Assembly (NCBI GenBank): GCA_038496445.1
Contig: JALMLS010000321.1
Location: 62,001-126,000, forward strand
DNA: 64,000 nt
Direction of reading: 5' to 3'
From: Trichosphaerium sp. ATCC 40318
Lineage: Eukaryota; Protista; Tubulinea
Shown here: one piece after another, positions 1 to 64,000 of the stretch
How positions within the stretch are numbered: the stretch's first letter is position 1
How the letters are laid out: each line of letters starts with the position of its first letter
Notes under the pieces: generated by a model
Database searches by the model: none
Told to the model about the DNA's origin: nothing
What the model saw: the letters and a program-made list of their open reading frames with translations, nothing else
Position numbers and translations under genes: made by a program

Positions 1-951
1 ATTATACGTTGCCTTTGATTTACTGGTCTTCTTAGATGCCAGTTGGGCTCAAATACTTTATTATTAGATCTGTCATCTTGAATAAAATCAATACTGTATA
101 CAAACAGAAAGACAGAGTCCAACAACAAAACAGTTTGTGTTGAACTAAAAATTTCGAACTGAAAATAACAAAGTTTGACTTATTCGTCAACAAGTTGCTT
201 GCAACAAATATAAATAGTATTCTAAGAACACGTATTGATTACGAGTGGGCTCTTTTGGTTTTAGTTCACGCAATTGAAAAGATGGAAGGGACTTTGTTAA
301 CTAATCCGAAAAAAACAAACAAAACTTCAAATGTAAAAAAGAGATTTTAACGTTTCCTCGTACCCAATATTGTTAACCTCTTGTTAAATGCACTAAGTAA
401 TGTGTCATTCCTGACAGCATATAATGCAGTGATTTTCCAAGACCTCGGCGTAGTAGCATTAAAGTAGTCGGCCACAAAATTATAAGCAAGTGGAAAATTT
501 GTTGAATTAATCCCGTCTTTTATCAACCGATGTTTAGAGTTGCTAGTCCACTCAGCCGATAGTAACTTATCCGAAAACTGCCACGTATTCTCGCTAGAAC
601 CCATACCGCGTTCTAGTTTATATAAATTAACAATCACGTGGAGAGGATACCAAGTAATCGCTTTGCAAAGGAAAAAAGAGTAAAACAAGAATGTGGCGTT
701 GACGTACTGACAATTGAAGAAATAGCCAAGTGACTTGGCAAACTACTTATGTAAGCACCTTGCTGTCCTCTTAGCAATGTTATATCAGTTTCTTGCTTTT
801 GTATCTTATCAAGAAGACCCTTAATCGTTTCTTTTTGCTCTAGAACCTCAACCTTTAATATTGCTACTTCTTTGTTAAGCTCCTCATTCACTTGATCTTG
901 CTTAGCCTTATCGGCAGCATAAGTATTCATAAACTTGTTCAAAGCATCCAT
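1..951 (-). CDS. Coiled-coil protein with possible PARP/ADP-ribosyltransferase-like domain (runs off the left edge)
   Basis: Spliced ORF MDALNKF...(coiled coil)...YNFVADYFNATT..WKITALYAVRNDTLLSAFNKR resembles the start of PARP-like catalytic domains. The catalytic motifs are not within the window. Confidence 0.4.
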
Positions 952-3502: not shown

Positions 3503-6500
3503 ATGGACAACTTGAGATTTGGGTTAGAATGCGTTGATAAGGTTCTAAACGAACCAGAACTTCTAAAAGAAGACTCAGAAGAGCTTGCTGAAGAAATAAA
3601 GAAAACTCTGAAGGGTCTGTACGATTTCGGTACGTACACGCACTACTACGCCTATTTCGATGCTTTCCAGTGCGACATATTAAATAATATTATTATAGCC
3701 AAACAAAGCGAGACAACATTCACAGGATCGCTCGGAGAGCTCGATGAGCTATTCGTAGACGGGTTAGAAATTGATCAAGTTTGGGAAGAACTGCAATTGC
3801 GTAACGCTCCTCTTGACGACTTTTTAAAGACACAAATCGGTTCCTTGAAGAAAAAAGCTGATTTAAACATGATTAACTTCTTTGCTGATGTTGACATGAG
3901 CAAATTCATGGGCGTTGACGCTGAAGCAATCGCAGACGTACGTTCTTTTTATGATATCAATAGAAATCAGCCTAAGAGCGTTTTAAAACAAATTGTCTTC
4001 AATTGAAGTTTTTTTATTTTATTTTCGATTTGTTTTGTTGTCACGTGATTGAAGCCTTGTGGGCTTTGATGTTATATGTTCTAATATTTTTTAAATAGCT
4101 TGTCGATGGATCTGAATCTAGTGGAGAATCTGAAGAGAGCGATGAGTCTGATGAGGATAAAGAAACTTCAAGAAAACGTGTCAGCTTTGCTGAGCGTGTT
4201 AAGCAACGAATAATCCCAAACCGTTATGGTGATGGCGAAGGAGGTGAAGAAGACAGAGTAGGCAGACTAAATCGTGAGCGAGAGGATAAAATTTCAGATG
4301 GCCAGGAAGACGAAACTGAGGTTTGCTTTTTTTTTCAACAATTTGAAATTGGAAAAAAAATTTTGACACATTTCTGCCTTTCTTGACACATATTTTTTTC
4401 CGTCGATTTTTCGTCACTCAAATGGCTTAATTTTTTACTCTTCTCATAGGAAGACATTGTTGAATTGTATGAAAATATGGAAGACTTTTTGGACTATCAA
4501 GCCCGAAGAGACAAAGGAGAGCTTGAGTCCGATGATGAAGATTGGGAAGAACAAGAAGAAGCTGATTTACTTATGTATGGTGATTCCAACATCAAGACAT
4601 TTGACAAATTTGAAGGAGGTAAATACTACGAACATAATCTTACAATTTTTTGAAAAAAAATCTGTTCTTTTTTCTTTTTTTTTTCTTTCAATTTATACGC
4701 GCACTACTCGCTTAGTCGGCTTTCTCATAAATTGTGCAGATATGGATGCTGAAGATAAAGAACTTGAGAAAGTATTCCAAGAGACATGGGCTTCATTAAA
4801 AAACACAGAGCTTAGCTCTGATGACGAAGATGAAGATGAAGACGCTCCTATCTACTATGAAGATTTTTTTGATCCAATTGGAGAGCCTAAACAGCCTCGT
4901 GATGATATGGACGTTGATGATATGGGTGATATGACTGATATAAGGGAGGAGCGCCGTAAAGAGCGCGGAAATGTAGATTTAGAAGCCGAAGAGGCTGGTC
5001 TCCCAGAGTTCGGTTCTATGAATGGTAGAGATGCATTGATTGCTGATTTATCTGGTGCTGTCGATGATGACCTTGATGAAGATGAGTTAGAATTGGAGGA
5101 GGATGAATTACCACCAATGTCAGCTTATGAGATAAAACAAGCAGAAATGCAAAGGAAAATAGGTAAGCGGATCTCAAACAATTGTTTCAAAGATCTTCCC
5201 TTTGGTTGGGTTGGTGAGACGTTTTTCTTATTTTTTTCTTTAAGAGGAGCTTGAAGAAGCAAGAGAGATACAAAGAGAAAAGGATTTACAACATGAAGAT
5301 GATGATAGATTCATAGAATCCGGATATGAAGCTAAAAAACGAAGGTTGCGTATGCAAATCGCTGAGCTTGAAGATGAGATTGTAGCAGAGAAGCCTTGGC
5401 AACTTACGGTACGTATACTTATAATTAAACCATTCTCACATCTGTTAGGGTGAAGTGCAATCCAGAGAGCGCCCAAGAGACTCTCTTCTAGAAGAGCCTC
5501 TTGAATTTTCAACAGCTGGAAAGCCTGTACCTTCAATTACTCCAGAGTTTACTGAAAACCTTGAAAGTATTATCAAAGAGCGTATTAGAGATAACGCTTG
5601 GGATGATGTTATACGAAAGGATGTAAGTGTACCCCAGCGTTACTCGTTTAATGCATTTGCTTATTCTGCGGTTATTTAGCCTGCACAACTTGATAGAAGA
5701 CAGGACGCTATAGCTCTTGATCACCAAAAGTCAAAGAAAGGTCTTGCTGAGGTTTACGAAGACGAGTTTATGAAGAAGAAAACAGGTACATAAAAGAGAC
5801 AATCATTGCTTTTCTTGTAGCGGCTTTCAGCTTTTGGACTCCAAAAACACAAATTACTAAGATTGTTGGTATTCCATGTACTCGAAACTAATACCTTTGG
5901 TAGGACAGGATTTGATGCAACGTGAGCACGAAGACGAAGTTATAGAAAAGCAAAATAAGGCCGTAAAGTGCGTAGTCTACTTGCAAATTGTCAATTTTCT
6001 ATACTTTCTTACATTAAACCTAGAATGCTCAAGAGTTTGTTTGCTCGGTTTGATGCTTTGGCTCAACTATCTTTTGCACCTGTACGTTCAAAAAAATCAT
6101 ATTTTCTTTTTACCCTTTTTTTTTTGTCGTTGAAACTCACTGTGTACGTAGATTAAAGTCAAAGACGATGAAACACAAGTTAAAAACAGAGATGCAATGG
6201 AAGTTGAAGAAATTCTTCCTGTGGCAGAATCAGAAGGAGCACGTCTTGCACCTGAGGTAAATACTTGAGTAGTTGTAATAAGAAGAAAACTAACAAAACG
6301 CTTTTAGGAAGTATTCTCAAGAAACAAAACAACTTTGTCCCAAATGGGCAAATCCGAGCGAACACGCGAGGATAATTCAGCTAAACGCAAGAGAGACAAA
6401 GCGCGGGTACATACAGTTGTTATTAAACAATACAGAGCATTAAATGTTATATTAAGGCGAAAATCAAAAACAAAGGATTCAAGGAAAGACAAGCAAAGAA

Positions 6501-8241: not shown

Positions 8242-8314
8242 CTCACCATAGCTCAGTTGGTAGAGCGGGAGACTGTAGATCTCTAGGTCACTGGTTCAAA
8301 TCCGGTTGGTGAGA
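8242..8314 (+). tRNA. tRNA-Tyr(GTA), intronless
   Basis: Full cloverleaf: acceptor CTCACCA/TGGTGAG, A box TAGCTCAGTTGG, anticodon arm GGAGA-CTGTAGA-TCTCT, B box GGTTCAAATCC, followed by a T-run Pol III terminator. Confidence 0.93.
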
Positions 8315-8497
8315 AGTATCTTTTTGCGCTTTTGTGGTCCATGGTGCATCTCTACACTTCATTTTGCATACTCACGCTGTGCATGCGTATTTTGTCCTTT
8401 AGAAAAAAGTACAAGTTTGTCTCTAGGCCCGTTTTTGGCCGAGATAAATGCTTGTCAAAAAAAAAACTTCAATGAATTTTCGTAAACAACGTGATGC

Positions 8498-8561
8498 TGA
8501 ACCAGTGACCTAGAGATCTACAGTCTCCCGCTCTACCAACTGAGCTATGGTGAGGAGGTGA
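8498..8561 (-). pseudogene. Inverted 5' fragment of tRNA-Tyr truncated in the T-loop
   Basis: Exact reverse complement of about 8235-8298; ends at GGTTCA. Confidence 0.9.
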
Positions 8562-16721: not shown

Positions 16722-17911
16722 ATGGACGAGTACGATAAGTTGGTGCGAAAAGCGCAGAAATATGTAAACGCTGCTGGATCTGCCGTTATTAAGCAAACAG
16801 ATGCCGTCAAAAAGTTTTTTGCCGATAACGAAGATTATTGTACAGTATTGAAATACGTACGCCTAGATATACTATTTGAAAGGTATTTTACAATTGCTTA
16901 CACCTAAACAGTGTATTCCTGCCGCATGTCTCGGTGTAGCCATCCTAGGTGGCTTAATGATCAGAAGAGGGCTTGTACGTTACACTTCAGCGGATCTTAT
17001 CCCAGAACGCCTTATCAAGCGCAATAAATACTTACGGGGATACGTAACTCATGTTACAGACGGCACGCACTATTTGTAACGTAGATACTAGCCTTTTATA
17101 AAAACAACCTTTGACATCATCCTACATGGCTGGAATAGTTGTATTCCAGCGTCATTACGTTGAACTCACTAATATAACTCTAGGTGACACTTTCTTCTTT
17201 TACCACATGGTACGTTGATGTAAATCTCAAAACGCTTACTTCTCTTGAAGCCACTGCTCCGCAGGATCACTCCTTTTAGTCGTGTCAAGAGAATATCACC
17301 AGATGAGACTATAAGGGTTCGTGTATCGGGTGTAGATGCCCCTGAGATTGCTCATGGACCTGGTAAAGAAGGACAAGCTTTTGGTGAGATTGCAAAAGGT
17401 TTTTTGAAGAAAAGGATAGAACATAAAATGGTTACAATACAGCTCTTTCAAAGAGATCAATACTCAAGAGTTGTATGTAATACTTGGTATAAAAAGTGGT
17501 TTTTCTACAATGTCAATGCATCAAAGGAATTATTGAATGCAGGTATGGCAAGTATGTATGCAGGACGTTCTCCTCTTCCTGCAACAACTACAAAACGCCT
17601 TTTGGCACTAGAAGAGTACGTAATAATTCTTTACACTCAGTGGTTATCCTCCCTTACCACTGCTATGAGACTGTAGCTAGTGAAGTGACTGAGGCGGCAA
17701 AGTTGCTTTTTCGTTCAATTTTTTTTGACAAAAATGTGTCAGTTGTTCTTCTTGGGAAAACGATCTAATGTTGTTTTGTTTAGGAGAGCTAAAGCTTCAA
17801 AGATTGGTATTTGGAGCCAAGAGAATTATATCAGTCCTACGGCATATAAGCACAAGTACAACTTATATTTTTTCTTTCTTATCACTGAATTGTTATTTTT
17901 CAAGGAAATAA
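16722..17911 (+). CDS. LCL3: Staphylococcal nuclease-family (LCL3-like) endonuclease with N-terminal TM segment
   Basis: LRGYVTHVTD|GDTFFFYH, TIRVRVSGVDAPE, QAFGEIAK, RDQYSRVV, AKASKIGIWS. Confidence 0.88.
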
Positions 17912-42585: not shown

Positions 42586-43640
42586 ATGTTTCTGTCTCAA
42601 AACACATCAAAAGCATCGCTTATCGCTCTACCTCCCGAAATTCAGCAATATATAGCGTCTATGCATGACCTAACAATATTTAACAACTGGTAAAATTTGT
42701 GTTCTTTTTTTTCTTTTTTTTTTTTTTCCTTGCAATTACTGTGTTTGCTAAAGCTTGTTTCTGTAGGCATTGTATCTGTAAAGAAGCAGCAATATTGACA
42801 CACTTTAATTTAAATTTGGAAAAACAAGGCAACTGGTACACGTGGTACAAAAACGGAAACAAAAAAACACAATATCATTTCGTCAATGGTGTACTTAATG
42901 GCATTTCAAGAATATGGAATTCATCAGGTATCCTCATATGTGAAAAAATGATGAAAGATGGTGTTGAGAATGGGTACTATAATACTTACAATAAAGACGG
43001 TAAAATTAAAGTAAAGATGCACAAGGTAAACGGAAAAAGAGACGGGAGTTACAACAATTTTTGGCAAAACGGAAAAATACAGGTGTCATTCAATTTTGTA
43101 AATTTAGAAAGGGAAGGCATTCACAGACAATGGCATGATAATGGTCAACTGGAAGTACTTTGTTTATTCAGAAAAGATATTTTAGAAGGTAGTTATTCAA
43201 GCTGGTATAGCACCGGACAAAAGAGAACTGAATGCTCATACAAAAATGGTAACAAACATGGATTTTATGAAACTTATCATGAAAATGGTAAAATCGAAAT
43301 GAACTGTATCATGAACAATGGAGTTAAAGATGGTACATATAGAGCATGGTATGATAATGGTCAACTTGAAATTAAGAGTTTTTATATAAAGGGTAAGACA
43401 GAAGGAATACATAGGCTGTGGTATGACAATGGTACTCTTGAGATGAGATGTTTCTTCAAAAATGGAAAAAAAGAAGGATTGTATGAGGCTTGGCATAAGA
43501 ATGGTATTATGGAGACTAGGTCTCAGTACAAGGATGGTTTGGAACAAGGGTTATGTGAGGTTTGGTATCCCAGTGGTCGACTTAAATATAGATGGATAAT
43601 GAAGGATAACGAACTTGAATCTGAGCTACCACTTAATTAA
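42586..43640 (+). CDS. F-box plus MORN-2 (YwqK-like) repeat protein
   Basis: Exon 1 SLIALPPEIQQYIASM..., one intron, then about eleven 24-aa repeats G.Y..WY.NGQL.......NG. Confidence 0.85.
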
Positions 43641-54565: not shown

Positions 54566-57500
54566 TTAAAGAGGAACAATAGTACACTTCAGACCATCAT
54601 TCCATTGCTTGTATTCTGGTGTGTAATATAAAAACGCACATGAAGAAGGACCTGTGTAACTACCAGGAACAGCAGCCTAAAATCATTGTAAATAAAGCAC
54701 ACCTTTAAAAGCAACTTGTGGCTCTGTCGTACCTTGACATCAATTTGAATTGTTGATTTTTGTTTTGGATCCATGCCACGCCAATACAGAACAACCTTTC
54801 TACCAATCACTTCATAGAAATCAATAGATTCACTCTTGACGAGCTCCTATCAAAGTACGTCAGTAAACAATACAAAACCACGTGATATTCTTCATGTGGA
54901 ACAGCAATACCTTTAATTTCTCATGGCGAGGCTCAAGGCCTCCTGGAAGTCCAATGATTGCGATGACCATGGGCAAGTCAGTATCTTTTTTATTTTCGAT
55001 ATCGACTTGGATTTCACCAGTCTCTCCTTCCTTGATTGACTCTGGCTTCATTTGAGTTGCAATTGATATTGCGCATTCATCAGAAGAAGGTCCTTTCAAT
55101 GAAAAGTAATTGATATTCACATTGTATGGTATGTTTCCTGATCCCTTGGGCATAGTTATTTTGAATTCGTGATTGCCAGGCTTGAGTTTTTGTGCAGCTT
55201 CACTGAAATCTACAAAAAAACCGAAACAGTTAGTTGGTTGGTTGTTACACATCTCAACAATTGTCTAGTACCAAGAGATATAGGTTCTACACTTGTAGTA
55301 GACATTGTCGTAGATATTTTGACACCACCAATAGTCTAAAAAACCCAAGTAAGGTCACAGTTTAATAGCTAGAACACAAAGTAAAGAAGAAAATAAATAG
55401 AAAGTCGCACAGCAACTATATTGATATCCTCATTTGTTGGATTCTTGTTCATTTGACCGTATGTGAATATAGCACGAAGAGCTTGAACAGTTGATTGTGA
55501 TGTACTCCAAGATCCATTTGATACTTGAGATTGAAGGTATTTCATTCCTGCTTGGATGTTTGATGAGTACTTGTTTGGATCATCACGCAACCATCCAGTA
55601 ACTGCAAGACCAGTTGTTTCAACAAATAGGGATTGTCCATATGACCTTACAATGGATGATGTGCCGCCTTCCACCTTACCATCTACAGATCAGGTTAGGC
55701 GATAAAGTCAATCAAGATGCGATGACAAAGTTCGACAAGGAGACTATATGCTTACCTTTGGCTTGTTTTGAAGCTAGATAGTCACCTGCTTGACATGCAG
55801 CTTTCTTGTTCTTGGCGTTGTTGAACGCCATGTACATGCATGCCCACACGTATGAATTTTTGTTATCAGATAGGGCTTTACCTTGAACATCAAGTTCCTT
55901 TGTAACGTCATTGGCAGCACCAAGTTCAGTGAGGCCATAAAGACAGTATGCTGTAAACTTTATTAGAAACAGCCAGTGAAATGGGTGTACATACCATTGT
56001 TGACGTCTGTTGGAGGTGAAGAGAAGGCATAACGACCATGACCAAGTTGGAAGCCTCCTTTACCATCTTTACGTGATAAAAGCCAACTCTTGGCTCGATT
56101 AACAAGTGCCTCGTTCGCCCCTGATATTCATGTTTTGCGTTAAGGTATGGCGGATCACCGGCTCATGAATCATTGACTTCATACGGATTAATGATGCTTC
56201 AAGATCTCGGTAAATCAATGGAAGGTACGTATAAGAAACAAATACCATTGTAGCCAAGTTAAAACCATTGACTTTGATTCATAGTTGATAATAATCTTTT
56301 TTTGGAGAGCACGTTGATTACCATTCGAATCCTGATGTTTTCTTTGTTTCATATCCAACTATTTTCTTGTATCCAACCATCATTTTACTGTGCATGTCTG
56401 AAATCAACGATGGATCAACGCCAACTGTGCCATCATTGAAGAACATGCCAGCCATAGCCATTGGATATAGTGTTGATCCAACTTGTTCAAAACATCCACA
56501 AGGTGTACGAATCATACCCTTCAGAGCTCTTTGAAAGTTGGCTGCATTTGTTGGTAGGATAGACACTTCAATACTTAGCGTATTGGGAACTAAACATAAC
56601 ATGTTAGATGCAACTGTTTGAAACACGCGAAGAGCGAAGTGCGCCAAAACAGCCTAAAATTACAACTTACCATAATCGGGCAGTATGTTGAACGTGTGCT
56701 TTTCTGTTTTACTCTTACTGATAGTACCACTTGCAGATGCTTCCAATGGGAATCCCTTGGATACAGTGTAAGATACTTGTGATACTCAAATATTGGTAAC
56801 GGTACCTTTGGTTGAATACGAACACTGCGAACAATATTGTCTTCACGCTCACTTGAAGTACCAACGACTTTGAGCTCGCTTGTGAGTGGTACATTCTGTA
56901 TATCGATTGGAATAACAGCACGTTCTATGAACAAGTTAGGTTCACATTAGTACTAGATAAGAAAACGCTAGAGTGTAAGTGACATACGTCTCTGTTCTGG
57001 TCCAAGTGTGACTCCTTTTCCTTTGTTTGTTTCTGGATCCAAAAGAAAACCATCTCCACCCCATACTTCGAATCCAACGTTTGTGATTTTATGTCCGGTG
57101 TTATTGACCATGAGTACAGGTAATTGTACTTTGTCACCGCAAGATACTTCGATTGGCACTTTGAGATCAACAGAGAAAGGTTCCTTGCAAGGAACAAGCC
57201 TTTTTAATAATTAAGTAAACAAAAGTATTTGATGAGCAAAAGATAACGTACAACTCATTGTAGCCTAGTAGATGTGCATGATGAACAGAATCACACATGA
57301 CATTAAAGCTTGTGATACTGTCATTCATGTCAAACTCAAAAGAGGCAAAACCTGTACAAGTTCAGTGAGTGCTATAAAAAAAAAGGTACATACCAAACTT
57401 ATCGGTGACTAATCCTGCATTCCAGTACAAAGTCTCTTTGAATTCAGTTCTGCAAAAGAAGAAAAGTAAGCTATGCAATACATAAAAAAGGTAAGTAATT

Positions 57501-60500
57501 GGTACCTGTCACCATCTGCTGTAGTAGGAGGCCTGAAAGGGAAAAACAAAAAGTCAGTTAAAGTCAGGAAAGGTTAAAAAAATGAAGTTGCATACGCGGT
57601 AAATGAGAACACCCTAAGCATCTTAGGTATGGGTTCTTTTTTTTGGTCTAAAAACCCTAAAAGGTATAAATAAATCGTCCATAACATGTCAACTACCAAG
57701 GTAACTAGATAAGCTAAAACGAGACTTGGGAACAGCCTCCCGTGCTATACTAGGAGCTGGCATAGACCTCATTCCCATGCTAGAAGGCATGCTTTGGTCT
57801 TGCATTAACATCATTTTAGAAGACTCTGGCCGACTTGATATCTTTGAAACCTTCTTCCTAGACTTAACCACTGGCTTTGATGCTTTCTTCATTGCCTTGG
57901 TTGGTTTGGGTTTTGGAGCAGAAGCCACAGATCTTACAGATGTACTCTGAAGCGTAATGCTTTCTGGAATGGCGCTATACTTTACTTTTGTGACGAAGTT
58001 ATAACCGTCATCTTCTTTCATGTAACAATCATATGGATTCTAAAAAGAAGGCTAATTAATTTCAACGTATTTCTCACTATGAGCCTTTTCAACATACTTC
58101 TTCAATCTCGGGTTGCTAGAACAACAAAAGTTAGTTTTGTGCACAGAAAAAAAAAAGCAAAGTTTAGATTGTGATTGCGTTCTTGTTTTTTTTGAGTTTG
58201 ACTTACACCAAGTTTCAATCCAGGTGCGCAAGCTACAACTTGTTGTGCTTTAGATCCATGTTCTTTCATAAAAGCTTCAAGATCCACTTTGTTTTTTACA
58301 AATACAAGTTTTCTCCAGCCCTAAAGTGCTTGTGTTATTATTTGTTTTCAAAAAAAACACCTTCATTTGCTTCTATATGGTTGCGTACTTGAGTGCCGAG
58401 TAGTAAATCAATTGCTGTGTTTCCTTTCTCATCATGTTTGAGGTATACGTGGGCATCGAATAGTTCTTTGACTTCACCTTCCAAGTAAGCCATTTCTTGC
58501 AATCTAGGTGCCTTTTTTCGGTTCTAAGCAAAACATTAGATTACAGTCAAGTTCTTGTTTTATTCTCATCCTAATATTAGCAAAAATAAACATACTTCTA
58601 CCATCTCTAGAACTGAGTTATCAACAACTGTAGTTCCAATAGTCGCATCTCTATATTTATACATGTTAATCACGCCAACAAAACACAACCGCAAATTCGA
58701 AAATAAAACATACGCAAGAGGTTGTCCGTTTTCTCCTGTTGCATACAATAGAACACGAACTTTGTTTCTTGGTGCATACACACCTCTTTCAGGCATGATT
58801 GAAACATTGACATGTTTGGATGGTTGTCTAGAACACGTGATTAGAAAAAAGAAACGAAAATGGTATCAACAAACCTGTAAACAAGTCTTTCAGCAACAGC
58901 AAGTCCAGTTCTCATCTCATAAGCAGTGACTCTAATTACACCTGCTGTTGATGTAGGAGGTGTAAAGAACAACTTAGATGCCTTCTTTCCCGTGATATCG
59001 ACTTTGATAGAGAGAATCTCAGTGTCACGTTTAAACAAACCAACATAATAAGCACCAGGTCCTAAACAACATCAGTAACATAATTATAGACTAACACTTG
59101 AACTCACGTGTTGTCTGAAGTGTCATCTCGATGGATGTATCAGTATTGACAAAGGCACCTTTCTTTGTGTTCAACACAGCTCCTGAAGACTCGAACAAGC
59201 TCTTATAACAAATTAGACACAAACAAAGGTTGAGAATTGTACTTGTTCAAGATAGATAAGGTTATCAACACCAGCTGGTTTTAAAATACGTAAAGCATAT
59301 TTTGAACCTTGTTTGGGTTTAAATGATAATTTACCACGTCCTTCATGTTCAGTCTTGAAAGCAGTAACTACTTTACTAAAAACAATAGTTAGTGGTATAC
59401 ACTACTAACAAAATAAACACGTGCCCACTTCTTGCTATCACCAACTCTCCTTCAATATCTCCAGGATCTCCAGATGGTGTGAAGCATTGCAAGTATAATC
59501 CACATTGCAATCCGTAAATAAGAGAACCTGACTCTGGATACATACGAATATCGAGTTTCTAAAGCAATTTAAGAAAAATCAGAGTGACTCCATTGGTACC
59601 TTTAGAAGAATAGGAATCGTTTTAGCAGTAGACTCTACACTACCTCCATCTTCAACAACGAATGTCAAACTGCCTTCACCAACCTCAATCTTGGCAGGAA
59701 GGTCAAAGCTGACCATACAATTTCCATCAGCGCCAACACTTGTGTCGCCTCTATCATTGTGGTTAGAGAAGTCTTTTTACGAGAAGTCTAGTACCTGTAT
59801 ACTTCAGAACCATCAACACGTGCAACTGCGTTCACTTTGGCGCCAACTGGAATGCCACCCTCAACACGTGAAACCTGGAAAGAAGGTTAGGTTTGTAGCT
59901 GTAAATTGAAGACATACAGTGAGTGATGCTGAAGCTTTATCTCCTGGTCCAAGTCCTTTACGTAAGAACTCAGCTTGTAAGTTAAGCTTTGGTGGCTGGT
60001 ATTCTCGAATATCAAATTTTCTTTCCTGAGTTACAAGCACGCAGTCATTTGCCCTAAACAACGTGTTAGATTAGTTGGTTTTTTTTGAATGGTTTGAAAA
60101 ACAAGTCAACGCACATTCCAGCATCAAACTGTATTGTATACTCTCCACCTGCTTTTCCTTTTGGTATCTTCCACTGATGAGCAATGCAAGTCATGCCTTT
60201 GTTCTGGTTTTCGCCCTTGAGAGTAAATTCGTTGGAGCCTGTTGAAAGAGGGAGCAAAGTGAGCATGTGGTAAGTCAAATAGTTTAGTAACATGTAAACC
60301 AAGCGTTACCTGAAGGTCCTGTTATCTTTCCGTTAATCTGAGTAAGATTCATTACATCTCCTCTCAGAGGTTCAAACGTATGAGCATCAAGGTATGTGAC
60401 TATCAACAGATAATTAGCCACAAAACTTGATGGCTGCAAATTTGCTGAGAAGAAAAACTTACCTCTAATCCAAACAGTTTCTTCTGGTTTGTACAACGGT

Positions 60501-62101
60501 TTATCTGTAGATACATATCCAATATATCTCTTTTTAGCATCTATGTTATAACTAGAAAGCGAAGGAGTGACACCAAGAGTAAGAGAAGGTAGTGACGTTT
60601 CAGCTATTAAAAAAAACATTATACTTTAAAAGTTTTTGGAACAAAACCAACTTCTAACTTCAGCTTACCTTCAACATACTTAAACGGTGTGTAAATACCT
60701 CCTGTGGTATTGATAGTAACAACAGAATAGTGATCGAACCCAACAGTTGGATAAATATCTCCTTTCTTTGGCAAATCAAAGGTGCTTGTTACAACCTTTT
60801 CACCGTTTTTTGTCCAGAACAATTTTTTGCCTTGAATTCCACAACCGATCACATCACCAACGCCAAAAGTGTTCTTTAGAGATTGAGGTTTCTGCTCTCC
60901 ATCATAAAAGACTAAATCGAACATTCAATTGCAATACGACTCAAATTGATAGAGAATAAGGAAAGAAATCGATCGCCTATACGTACTATCTCCATCGTCA
61001 CTGTGGTATCCATAACTACCTTTCACCCATCCAGGGAATTTAGTGTCTGTAGGGAATGACTGTAAAGCATATCCCACGCCCACAACGCTATCATAAAAAA
61101 GTGAGATAATTGAGTAGTAACTCCATAAAAGTAAGAGTACCCAGAATCTCCTTCTCGTTTCATACTGACAATGGACACTTCAAAGTACTTCAACGAGTTT
61201 AGGAACTGTACTGCGTGTTCACCTCCGCGACCTGTCTTAGTTGGTCTTGAGCGTATAATAGATCCATTGACTATTGCACTATCACCATGACGTGTTCCTA
61301 TCGCCAAAAGGTAAACAAGAAAATAATCACGTGACTAGAAATAGAAAAAAAAGTAATTAAAACTCACGTTCATTGTAAATCAGAGGTATCTGTAGTGTCC
61401 CCGTTGTCACAGTGAGCGCAGCTTTGTTATCGGCACCAATACAAGGGAATAGGCGAGGTCTAATAGATGGAGGTACTTTCTCAGGTGATTTACCAACTCG
61501 TTCTCCATTCAATGTCCTTTTAAACACTTAGAACATCTTCAGACCTTGAAATAGTAATCGTACCAGAATACAGTGCCATCTGTCTCTATACCACAGCCTA
61601 CAACTGAACCCTCACCGTACTTTGTTGATAATTCAGAAGCAATATCATTAAAATAGCTCTTTCCACTTTCACCGTGGTAGCCCCATGAACTAATGGCGAA
61701 TAAACGGTTGCTTATCAAAAGATAACGGTTTTACTCAATTTTAAGGTTAAAACGCACTTTTTGGCCCAACCTGGAAAGTCATCAGTCAATCCAATGTCTT
61801 TTGTTGCGTATCCAATGGCACAACCGCTATTTTAGTCACCCATTAGATATTTTTACTAAAACTGATTGGTACCCTTCTCCTTTATCTCCTACGTGAAGTG
61901 ACTTTATGTTTACTTCATAATACGCGATATCTGCAGTACAGAGTTGAAATACCTTTATTTATCAACAAAACATCCTCAAAACGCTATAAAAGAGTGTCTT
62001 ACTTGTTCTGTGCCGGCTTCTTTGACATTTACAGATAATTCAACGGCTTTTCCGCTTTCAAGCTTTTTAACAGAGTACGCCAAGCTTTGGCGTGTACTCA
62101 T
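54566..62101 (-). CDS. Thioester-containing alpha-2-macroglobulin-family protein with two N-terminal SPRY domains, no signal peptide; one exon inverted
   Basis: SPRY x2 (YYEV..GCAIGYA..FPGW..SWGYHG; YFEV..YGYHSDDG..GDVIGCG), VSTDKPLYKPEETV, DLLLGTQ|GWR, ETLYWN, thioester PCGCFEQ, STVQALRA, MVIAIIGLPGGL. Confidence 0.9.
56145..56224 (+). other. Inverted exon of the minus-strand thioester-protein gene
   Basis: Plus-strand ...TTAAG|G-TAT-GGC...ATG-GAA-G|GTACGT encodes (W)YGGSPAHESLTSYGLMMLQDLGKSME(G), exactly bridging the minus-strand exons ending SGFE-TG (56322) and starting GG-ANEALVNRAKSWL (56120). Confidence 0.92.
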
Positions 62102-62542: not shown

Positions 62543-62685
62543 TACCAATTTATTTTTGCAGCACCAGCGTTAAGTGTAGTAGGAGGCAGTTGTAGGGATT
62601 GGACCAAGGTTAACAATAAAAAATAACATTGTTTTATTTTGTGGATTATAGAATAACGTAAATCGTCTTTAATTTAGTAACAGTT

Positions 62686-64000
62686 TTAAAGAGGAACAAT
62701 AGTACACTTCAGACCATCATTCCATTGTTTGTATTCTGGTGTGTAATATAAAAATGCACATGAAGAAGGACCTGTGTAACTACCAGGAACAGCAGCCTAA
62801 AATCATTGTAAATAAAGCACACCTTTAAAAGCAACTTGTGGCTCTGTCGTACCTTGACATCAATTTGAATTGTTGATTTTTGTTTTGGATCCATACCACG
62901 CCAATACAGAACAACCTTTCTACCGATCACTTCATAGAAATCAATAGATTCACTCTTGACAAGCTCCTATCAAAATACGTCAATAAAAATCACGTGATCT
63001 AATAGCAATACCTTTAATTTCTCATGACGAGGCTCAAGGCCTCCTGGAAGTCCAATGATTGCGATGACCATGGGCAAGTCAGTATCTTTTTTATTTTCGA
63101 TATCGACTTGGATTTCACCAGTCTCTCCTTCCTTGATTGACTCTGGCTTCATTTGAGTTGCAATTGATATTGCACATTCATCAGAAGAAGGTCCTTTCAA
63201 TGTAAAATAATTGATATTCATATTGTACGGTATGTTTCCTGATCCCTTGGCCATTGTTATTTTAAATTCATGTTTGCCAGGCTTAAGTTTTTGTGCAGCT
63301 TCACTGAAATCTACAAAAAAACCGAAACAGTTAGTTGGTTGTTACACATCTCAACAATTTCTCTAGTACCAAGATCTATAGCCTCTATGCTTGTAGCAGA
63401 TACTGTCTTAGTGACTTTGATACCACCAATAGTCTAAAAAACCCAAGTAAGGTGAAAGTAACAAGAAACAACAAAACACAACAAATGAAATTGAAATGTT
63501 TGCCGTACCGCAACTAGGCTAATATCGCCGGTATCTGAAGTCTTATTCATTCGACCATATGTGAATATAGCACGAAGAGCTTGAACAGTTGATTGTGATG
63601 TACTCCAAGATCCATTTGATACTTGAGATTGAAGGTATTTCATTCCTGCTTGGATGTTCGATGAGTACTTGTTTGGATCATCACGCAACCATCCAGTAAC
63701 TGCAAGACCAGTTGTTTCAACAAATAGGGATTGTCCATATGACCTTACAATGGATGATGTGCCACCCTCTACCTTGCCATCTAAAGATCAGGTTAGGCGA
63801 TAAAGTCAATCAAGATGTGATGATAAAGTTCGACAAGGAGACTATATGCTTACCTTTGGCTTGTTTTGAAGCTAAATAGTCACCTGCTTTACATGCAGCT
63901 TTCTTGTTCTTGGTGTTGTTGAACACCATGTACATGCATGCCCACACATACGAATTTTTGTTATCAGATAGGGCTTTACCTTGAACATCAAGTTCCTTTG
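62686..64000 (-). CDS. 3' part of a second, tandem thioester/alpha-2-macroglobulin gene (continues beyond window)
   Basis: High nucleotide identity to 54566-55901 including introns (offset about 8.1 kb). Confidence 0.92.

What the first reader, a model, noticed from the sequence alone, without database searches (positions are those of the whole stretch)
56121..56322. An essential exon of an otherwise intact thioester-protein gene sits on the opposite strand
Seen: the minus-strand exon containing GCFEQ ends in phase 2 (GAA TG|gtaatc, 56322) and the next minus-strand exon begins with GG (needs phase 1, 56120), so direct splicing would frameshift. Between them, the PLUS strand carries an 80-nt exon with its own acceptor (TTAAG, 56144) and donor (GTACGT, 56225). 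It supplies the G completing TGG, 26 codons (YGGSPAHESLTSYGLMMLQDLGKSME) and the G completing GGG. Knowledge: this matches the GFEW.G..P.HE.LT.YGL segment that follows the thioester in bacterial-type alpha-2-macroglobulins. Flipping about 56130-56282 (bounded only by AT dinucleotides) restores two normal-sized introns (~54 and ~67 nt) and creates a 10-bp palindrome ATTCATGAAT at one junction. I found no other lesion in the ~30 other exons. Inference: (a) a reversible DNA inversion acting as an on/off switch, (b) trans-splicing from an antisense transcript, (c) a recent inactivating micro-inversion tolerated because of the tandem paralog, or (d) an assembly artefact.
Basis: partly seen in the sequence, partly recalled or inferred. 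Interest (0 to 1): 0.92.

Follow-up and report, generated by a model that had tools for sequence, protein, structure and literature searches.

The report
Flipped exon in a thioester-protein gene
One 80-base exon of an otherwise intact thioester-protein gene does lie backwards in this assembly, but it looks like a very recent local inversion or an assembly error in one of two tandem gene copies, not a genetic switch or a trans-splicing system.

Summary
A SPRY-SPRY + alpha-2-macroglobulin/thioester gene lies on the minus strand (about 54566-62101). Its exon after the thioester exon lies on the plus strand (56145-56224) and keeps its own AG acceptor and GT donor. A profile of this segment from 109 homologues hits that spot alone in the six-frame window (E 2e-9; next 1.5).

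The exotic readings find no support. No inverted repeats flank the segment. The only spliced contigs that carry the exon in sense orientation belong to other copies. The one that can be checked has the tandem paralogue's bases at 12 of 12 checkable sites; another is a third copy.

Contigs that look like the window copy exist and are spliced on both sides, but none reaches the junction. No run covers the introns. So independent reads neither confirm nor refute the inversion.

The copy is otherwise open (a 40-exon model), and pN/pS against the paralogue is 0.10. The inversion is therefore very young or not real. Direct exon skipping gives a stop after 6 codons.

Earlier notes of this scan report two more genes in this assembly with an exon on a small inverted segment; in one, the mRNA is intact.

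My odds: assembly or library artefact about 0.45, young null allele about 0.40, switch or trans-splicing under 0.1.

The parts
54566..62101 (-). Gene copy W: SPRY-SPRY + MG2/A2M/TED thioester protein, about 40 exons, about 1684 aa in my model
   Evidence: Pfam hits on single exons: SPRY, MG2, A2M, TED. tblastn of homologues. Codon-trained exon chaining gives an open frame from ATG 62101 to the stop at 54566 once 56130-56282 is flipped.
56322..56589 (-). Exon 32: thioester exon (PCGCFEQ ... SGFEW), ends two bases into a codon (TG|gtaatc)
   Evidence: The intron in front of it (56590-56670) is confirmed by spliced contigs. phmmer finds 502 homologues, the best at 46% identity.
56145..56224 (+). 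Exon 33 on the opposite strand: 1 + 78 + 1 bases, YGGSPAHESLTSYGLMMLQDLGKSME, with its own AG acceptor (56143-56144) and GTACGT donor (56225-56230)
   Evidence: Homologue segments. Profile hit E 2e-9, unique in the window.
56130..56282 (.). Approximate inverted segment (about 153 bp). Bounds are uncertain: left 56128-56140, right about 56245-56295. The ends share only 3 nt of reverse-complement ambiguity (ATG/CAT).
   Evidence: Flipping gives introns of 54 and 67 nt. Ambiguity and palindrome check. No flanking inverted repeats above chance.
55995..56120 (-). Exon 34: starts with the last two bases of a codon, (G)ANEALVNRAKSWLLSRKDGKGGF...
   Evidence: The downstream intron 55951-55994 is confirmed by spliced contigs. 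The paralogue's transcript has 6 letters where W has 9 at 56112-56120 (my reading of the record coordinates).
62645..64000 (-). 3' end of tandem paralogue P, which runs off the window
55210..55442 (-). Hypervariable block between W and P: 82% identity against 96-98% elsewhere. It contains about 95 coding bases.
   Evidence: Spliced contigs of all copies carry 92-95 letters here that do not align to W at 86% or better.

Best explanation
The inverted exon is not a device. It is a non-programmed local inversion of about 150 bp confined to copy W of a tandemly duplicated SPRY-A2M/thioester gene. Most likely it is an error of the assembly or of the sequenced library rather than the state of the organism's working gene.

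Shown:
- The exon is the true missing exon and lies on the wrong strand in the assembly.
- The paralogue is transcribed with the exon in normal order.
- W has been under purifying selection for nearly all of its history and has no other visible lesion.
- W-like transcripts exist and are normally spliced on both sides of the lesion.

Inferred:
- A perfectly clean gene with a single balanced inversion, in an assembly where earlier notes report two more exon-bearing small inversions (one with intact mRNA), points to a systematic technical source.
- If the assembly is right, the same data mean a very young null allele (first rival).
For: - Clean gene apart from the flip: the 40-exon frame is open, and the 440-codon stretch on transcript-confirmed introns is open.
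- pN/pS between W and P is 0.10 (23 synonymous and 8 non-synonymous differences, pS 0.118) over 900 coding bases. Any real inactivation must be much younger than the duplication.
- W-like contigs in run X1 carry W's bases at 7 or more W/P diagnostic sites. They are spliced at 55682/55756, 55950/55995 and 56754/56805. Their depth (about 6) is not below that of the non-W contig in that run (4.8; the paralogue or the third copy). This gives no sign of nonsense-mediated decay, but it is weak evidence.
- Earlier notes on the same assembly: a dioxygenase gene with 233 bp inverted and 144 bp lost but intact mRNA (s1-378527), and a filamin-repeat gene with one exon on the opposite strand (s1-401035, s1-401037). 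I did not check these myself.
Against: - The inversion is balanced. Nothing is lost or duplicated, and both restored introns are of normal size. A chimeric read or a misplaced contig does not easily produce that.
- No inverted repeat exists that could mislead a graph assembler.
- The inverted exon is error-free.
- The window has no N.
- I could not see a single genomic read, so the artefact is inferred and not shown.
Confidence: 0.45

Rival explanations
1. The inversion is a real, very young micro-inversion in the sequenced strain or haplotype. It arose from two breaks rejoined, or from a replication template switch. It makes copy W a null or truncated allele (exon skipping gives GFEW-GERGTC-stop). 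It is tolerated because the tandem paralogue P and at least one further copy are expressed.
For: - The inversion is balanced and restores introns of 54 and 67 nt.
- The ends share only 3 nt of microhomology and there are no long repeats, as expected for end joining or template switching.
- Short in-place inversions are a documented mutation class (PMC5453318, PMC8604942).
- Redundancy exists: P and a third copy are transcribed.
- The family has many members in this genome (unchecked notes).
- The clean gene and the low pN/pS fit a very recent event.
Against: - It requires catching the gene in a very narrow time span: no second lesion in about 5 kb of coding sequence.
- Micro-inversions are a rare class of disabling mutation, yet this assembly reportedly has three.
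- No skipped (56322 to 56120) or other aberrant junction was seen in four RNA runs, although coverage of W there was nil.
Confidence: 0.4
2. The segment is a programmed, reversible DNA inversion acting as an on/off switch for this copy, like a bacterial intragenic inverton.
For: - The exon is flipped together with both of its splice sites, so flipping back would restore a perfect gene.
- Other small inverted exon segments are reported in the same genome.
Against: - No inverted repeats flank the segment; the best is 8 nt, and it lies inside the segment.
- No recombinase or transposase domain was found in the 14 ORFs of 130 aa or more that I scanned.
- No contig shows W in the other orientation.
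- The known switches of this kind are bacterial and depend on inverted repeats plus an invertase (10.1101/2023.03.11.532203).
Confidence: 0.04
3. The DNA is truly inverted, and the cell still makes full-length W mRNA by trans-splicing the exon from an antisense transcript, as mod(mdg4) in Drosophila uses exons from the opposite strand.
For: - The exon keeps an AG acceptor and a GTACGT donor on the plus strand.
- W-like transcripts are present at normal depth in run X1.
- Sense pre-mRNA and an antisense transcript would pair over about 150 nt. This is my own inference.
Against: - The sense-joined contig that can be assigned is paralogue-type: 12/12 sites for X2 record 8, with non-W bases on both sides of the exon. 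Others are paralogue-type or a third copy.
- An internal exon would need two trans-splicing events.
- mod(mdg4) joins only 3' terminal exons and relies on dedicated intron motifs (PMC4387717, PMC13490949).
- The retained splice sites are simply what a young inversion leaves behind.
Confidence: 0.03

Closest known systems
Short in-place inversions from replication template switching or two-break rejoining (micro-inversions; Loytynoja and Goldman 2017, PMC5453318; yeast IR-spacer inversion, PMC8604942)
   Same: A balanced inversion of 100-200 bp with nothing lost, at most a few bases of microhomology at the ends, occurring in one copy of a duplicated gene.
   Different: The yeast type inverts the spacer between short inverted-repeat arms, and no such arms exist here. 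Most described events are shorter. Whether this one exists in the organism's DNA is unproven.
Local mis-orientation in genome assemblies
   Same: A small segment reversed inside otherwise colinear sequence. The gene is otherwise perfect. The same kind of defect is reported in other genes of the same assembly, once with intact mRNA.
   Different: There is no gap, no N and no repeat at the junctions, and the event is balanced. That is not the usual signature of a misplaced contig or a chimeric read.
Bacterial intragenic invertons and phase-variation switches (Hin, Fim; 10.1101/2023.03.11.532203)
   Same: A DNA segment inside a coding region that would change the product if flipped.
   Different: Those depend on flanking inverted repeats and a site-specific recombinase, and both orientations coexist in a population. 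The first was tested here and not met. The others were not seen.
mod(mdg4) trans-splicing in Drosophila (PMC4387717, PMC13490949)
   Same: A coding exon with its own splice signals on the strand opposite to the rest of the gene.
   Different: mod(mdg4) joins alternative 3' terminal exons, uses conserved intron motifs and is ancient. Here the exon is internal, the paralogue has it in cis, and no copy-specific joined mRNA was found.
Thioester proteins of the A2M/C3/TEP superfamily
   Same: The CxEQ thioester motif (PCGCFEQ), MG2, A2M and TED domains, and the conserved GFEW-(F/Y)GxxPxHExLTxYGL segment that the flipped exon encodes.
   Different: Two N-terminal SPRY domains. The best sequence relatives are only 46% identical, among them intron-free genes of Anaeramoeba ignava. 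The 'bacterial-type' assignment is not supported by the solved-structure search.

Membership tests
A2M/C3/TEP thioester protein superfamily | Thioester motif CxEQ in the TED domain | tested here: met
   PCGCFEQ in exon 32. It aligns to GCGEQ of A2ML1 and to CGCFEQ of the homologues.
A2M/C3/TEP thioester protein superfamily | MG2, A2M and TED domains in order | tested here: met
   Single-exon Pfam hits lie in the right order but each falls below the curated cut-off. phmmer finds 502 homologues. The closest full-length one carries MG2, A2M and TED_complement and matches human A2M at 3e-26.
Bacterial-type A2M (YfhM/YfaS) | Closer to bacterial than to eukaryotic A2M | tested here: not met
   Through homologue P0003 the best solved matches are human A2M, A2ML1, CD109 and C3. 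YfhM matches only an MG domain, at 5e-5. One metagenomic homologue is named YfaS by its source. No tree was built.
Programmed invertible DNA switch (inverton) | Inverted repeats flanking the invertible segment | tested here: not met
   There are only chance-level repeats of 8 nt or less, and none brackets 56130-56282. The ends share 3 nt of reverse-complement ambiguity.
Programmed invertible DNA switch (inverton) | Both orientations present in DNA of one strain | tested here: inconclusive
   All four runs laid were spliced RNA contigs with no intronic coverage.
Programmed invertible DNA switch (inverton) | Site-specific recombinase nearby | tested here: inconclusive
   No recombinase or transposase domain was found in the 14 ORFs of 130 aa or more that I scanned. 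Spliced genes were not modelled.
Trans-splicing of opposite-strand exons (mod(mdg4) type) | mRNA carrying this copy's own variants joined to the opposite-strand exon | tested here: not met
   The joined contigs carry the paralogue's bases (12/12 checkable sites for X2 record 8, with non-W bases at 56032-56039 and 56377) or belong to a third copy. Coverage of W at the junction was nil, so absence is not proven.
Trans-splicing of opposite-strand exons (mod(mdg4) type) | Independent plus-strand transcript over the exon | not testable with these tools
   Contigs carry no strand information and no raw reads were available.
Micro-inversion (mutation) | Ancestral orientation in a close relative; balanced event | tested here: met
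   The paralogue's transcript has the exon in cis order. Flipping restores introns of 54 and 67 nt with nothing missing.
Micro-inversion (mutation) | Inverted arrangement present in genomic reads | not testable with these tools
   No DNA coverage in the runs laid. The window's proteins are absent from the protein collections. The metagenome scan found only distant relatives.
Assembly mis-orientation | Genomic reads contradict the assembly | not testable with these tools
   As above. Recurrence in the same assembly is known only from earlier unchecked notes.

The most novel reading that the evidence does not exclude
Exon-sized inversions recur in this genome: three genes have been noted so far. 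They could reflect a real biological process. One possibility is an unusually high rate of in-place micro-inversion. Another is a system in which flipped exons are still used, through DNA re-inversion in part of the nuclei or through trans-splicing from antisense transcripts. Either would make this protist a natural case of exon-level gene scrambling.
Probability: 0.07. Interest if true: 0.8.

Novelty: already known. Interest (0 to 1): 0.25.

Why it matters
If the inversion is an assembly error, it matters only for annotation. A gene predictor will drop or mangle this gene; an in-frame cryptic path that deletes 37 residues exists. The assembly may hold more such local flips.

If it is real, it is a textbook young null allele in a tandem gene family and a clean example of a balanced micro-inversion.

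It would matter much more only if W-specific full-length mRNA coexisted with inverted DNA. Nothing here suggests that.

Tried and rejected
1. I looked for the organism's own proteins or independent contigs.
   - The search of all representatives with exon 32 gave a best identity of 46%.
   - The word-indexed search gave no candidate.
   - The metagenome scan found two distant loci only.
   - So I had no route to the paralogue's genomic sequence or to another assembly.
2. I treated the sense-joined contigs as possible evidence for trans-splicing or a switch. I rejected this after the variant comparison.
3. The weak tblastn hit at 411-449 (+) suggested another A2M gene at the window start. It is a chance match; no homologue aligns there.
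4. A naive exon-chaining model that maximises coding length read through introns, so I discarded it. I replaced it with a codon-trained model that reproduces the transcript-confirmed introns.
5. The palindrome at the restored junction depends on the chosen breakpoints and is common in this sequence, so I did not use it as evidence.
6. I tried to judge the assembly technology from tandem arrays. Nothing informative came of it.
7. The organism was not identified. The closest homologues are in Anaeramoeba ignava, but those genes are intron-free and 20-24% GC, so that is a different lineage.

Full report
**1. The observation**

The minus strand of 54566-62101 carries a many-exon gene. Its exon translations hit SPRY (twice), MG2, A2M and the TED domain of alpha-macroglobulins.

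The thioester exon (PCGCFEQ ... SGFEW) runs 56589..56322 and ends two bases into a codon (GAA TG|gtaatc). The next minus-strand exon starts at 56120 with the last two bases of a codon.

Between them, the plus strand holds an 80-base exon at 56145-56224. It has an AG in front and GTACGT behind, and it encodes YGGSPAHESLTSYGLMMLQDLGKSME.

Exon 32 has 502 homologues in the representative library, the best at 46% identity. All ten that I inspected continue after GFEW with (F/W)GxxPxHEALTAYGL..., which is the segment the flipped exon encodes. A 28-column profile from 109 homologues finds one significant hit in the six-frame translation of the whole window. It is the plus-strand piece 56125-56250, at E 2e-9; the next best is 1.5. 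So the exon is the true missing exon, it exists once, and it is on the wrong strand.

With the introns that spliced contigs confirm, and the exon read in sense, 440 codons are open. After flipping 56130-56282 in silico, a codon-trained exon-chaining model gives 40 exons and 1684 aa, open from ATG 62101 to the stop at 54566. It reproduces the confirmed introns and gives introns of 54 and 67 nt around the exon. Without flipping, direct skipping yields GFEW-GERGTC-stop. The only in-frame path uses a cryptic acceptor and deletes 37 conserved residues.

**2. What the public runs show**

One search found 8 runs holding parts of 55400-57000. I laid four of them on 54900-58100. All contigs are spliced (CT..AC joints, that is GT..AG on the minus strand), so they are RNA. 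No run covers an intron, so none tests the DNA orientation.

Two 'opposite strands' joints (56111 to 56224 and 56148 to 56319), together with loose ends, show contigs in which exon 33 sits in sense order between exons 32 and 34.

The 1313-base contig of run X2 carries this form. It differs from the window at 5 + 7 places in 55502-55950. In the part where the paralogue lies inside the window (63102-64000), all 12 of its differences are exactly the paralogue's bases. It also differs from W on both sides of exon 33, at 56032-56039 and at 56377. This contig is therefore the mRNA of the tandem paralogue P.

The other contigs over exon 32 are either P-type (X4 record 14, X5 record 15) or a third copy 91% alike (X4 record 13). 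Both X4 contigs carry the joined loose end; the X5 contig stops short of the junction.

Contigs of run X1 carry W's bases at 7 or more diagnostic sites. They are spliced at 55682/55756, 55950/55995 and 56754/56805, but they stop at 56021 and 56342, short of the junction. Their depth (about 6) is not below that of the non-W contig in the same run (4.8; the paralogue or the third copy).

In summary:
- The paralogue is normal.
- A W-like gene is transcribed.
- Nothing shows what W's mRNA looks like across the lesion.
- No 56322-to-56120 skip was seen.

**3. Tests of a mechanism**

No inverted repeat brackets the segment. The longest perfect one is 8 nt, and its left arm lies inside the exon. The ends of the proposed segment share 3 nt of reverse-complement ambiguity.

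Such palindromes occur 1.6 times per kb here. The breakpoints themselves cannot be fixed. Splice-site and intron-size limits place the left one at 56128-56140 and the right one at about 56245-56295.

None of the 14 ORFs of 130 aa or more that I scanned has a recombinase or transposase domain.

**4. Age of the lesion**

W and P are 96-98% identical in exons and similar in introns. Over 900 coding bases they differ by 23 synonymous and 8 non-synonymous changes (pS 0.118, pN 0.011, pN/pS 0.10).

Both copies have thus been under purifying selection for nearly all the time since the duplication. Together with the absence of any other lesion, the inversion is either much younger than the duplication or not present in the organism.

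**5. Context from earlier notes (unchecked by me)**

The same assembly has a dioxygenase gene with a 233-bp inverted segment plus a 144-bp loss. Its mRNA is intact, and the follow-up judged it a lesion or an assembly error (s1-378527). It also has a filamin-repeat gene with one exon on the opposite strand (s1-401035, s1-401037).

Three clean exon flips, in an assembly whose genes otherwise look intact, are hard to explain as ordinary decay. In ordinary decay, stops and frameshifts would outnumber micro-inversions by far. This raises the weight of a systematic source, technical or biological.

**6. Verdict**

The switch and trans-splicing readings have no support. The defining features that could be tested (flanking repeats, copy-specific joined mRNA) were not met. 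Two ordinary readings remain.

- **For an artefact (0.45):** a perfect gene apart from one flip, normal W-like transcript depth, and recurrence in the assembly with intact mRNA elsewhere.
- **For a real young null allele (0.40):** the event is balanced, error-free and without any repeat or gap that would mislead an assembler. Short in-place inversions are a known product of template switching or two-break repair (PMC5453318, PMC8604942). Expressed paralogues provide redundancy.
- **Switch (0.04) and trans-splicing (0.03):** the remainder goes to these. The known models for them are repeat-dependent bacterial invertons (10.1101/2023.03.11.532203) and mod(mdg4), which joins terminal exons with dedicated motifs (PMC4387717, PMC13490949).

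The decisive test is to map the assembly's own genomic reads over 56000-56450.

**7. The family**

The gene is a thioester protein of the A2M/C3/TEP superfamily with two N-terminal SPRY domains. Its nearest sequence relatives are 46% identical in exon 32. They include intron-free, AT-rich genes of Anaeramoeba ignava.

Through the closest full-length homologue, the nearest solved structures are human A2M, A2ML1, CD109 and C3, not bacterial YfhM.

Noticed in passing
window 55210-55442 (and 63310-63540 in the paralogue): A hypervariable block between the two tandem copies: 82% identity against 96-98% elsewhere. It includes about 95 coding bases (about 32 aa between the TED and the C-terminal domain).
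   Followed up: partly
window 56112-56120: The paralogue's transcript has 6 letters where W has 9 at the start of exon 34. This is an in-frame one-codon difference 10-20 bases from the left breakpoint. The paralogue's length matches homologue P0003 there.
   Followed up: partly
window 56319-56590 and 55090-55531 (runs X2, X4): A third expressed copy of the gene exists, about 91% alike in the thioester exon, with its own variants at 55154, 55175 and 55470-55501. It also has exon 33 in normal order.
   Followed up: partly
window 56447: W has G where all four runs, including the W-like contig of X1, read T. The change is synonymous (GGC to GGA). It is a private variant or an error of the assembly.
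   Followed up: partly
window 60622-61730: Two SPRY domains sit in front of the MG domains of the thioester protein. No signal peptide was looked for. Other first-stage notes cover this fusion.
   Followed up: no
L001 (Anaeramoeba ignava, JAPDFW010000069.1): A homologous thioester protein of 1935 aa carries ubiquitin-like domains between the MG2 and A2M domains.
   Followed up: no
window 8242-8314 (+) and 8481-8554 (-): Two tRNA genes in convergent orientation; the second only just reaches Rfam's cut-off.
   Followed up: no
window 3503-5254 (+), 17245-17676 (+), 42699-43640 (+): Exons of an Mpp10-like gene, a staphylococcal-nuclease (Tudor-SN-like) gene and a MORN-repeat gene.
   Followed up: no
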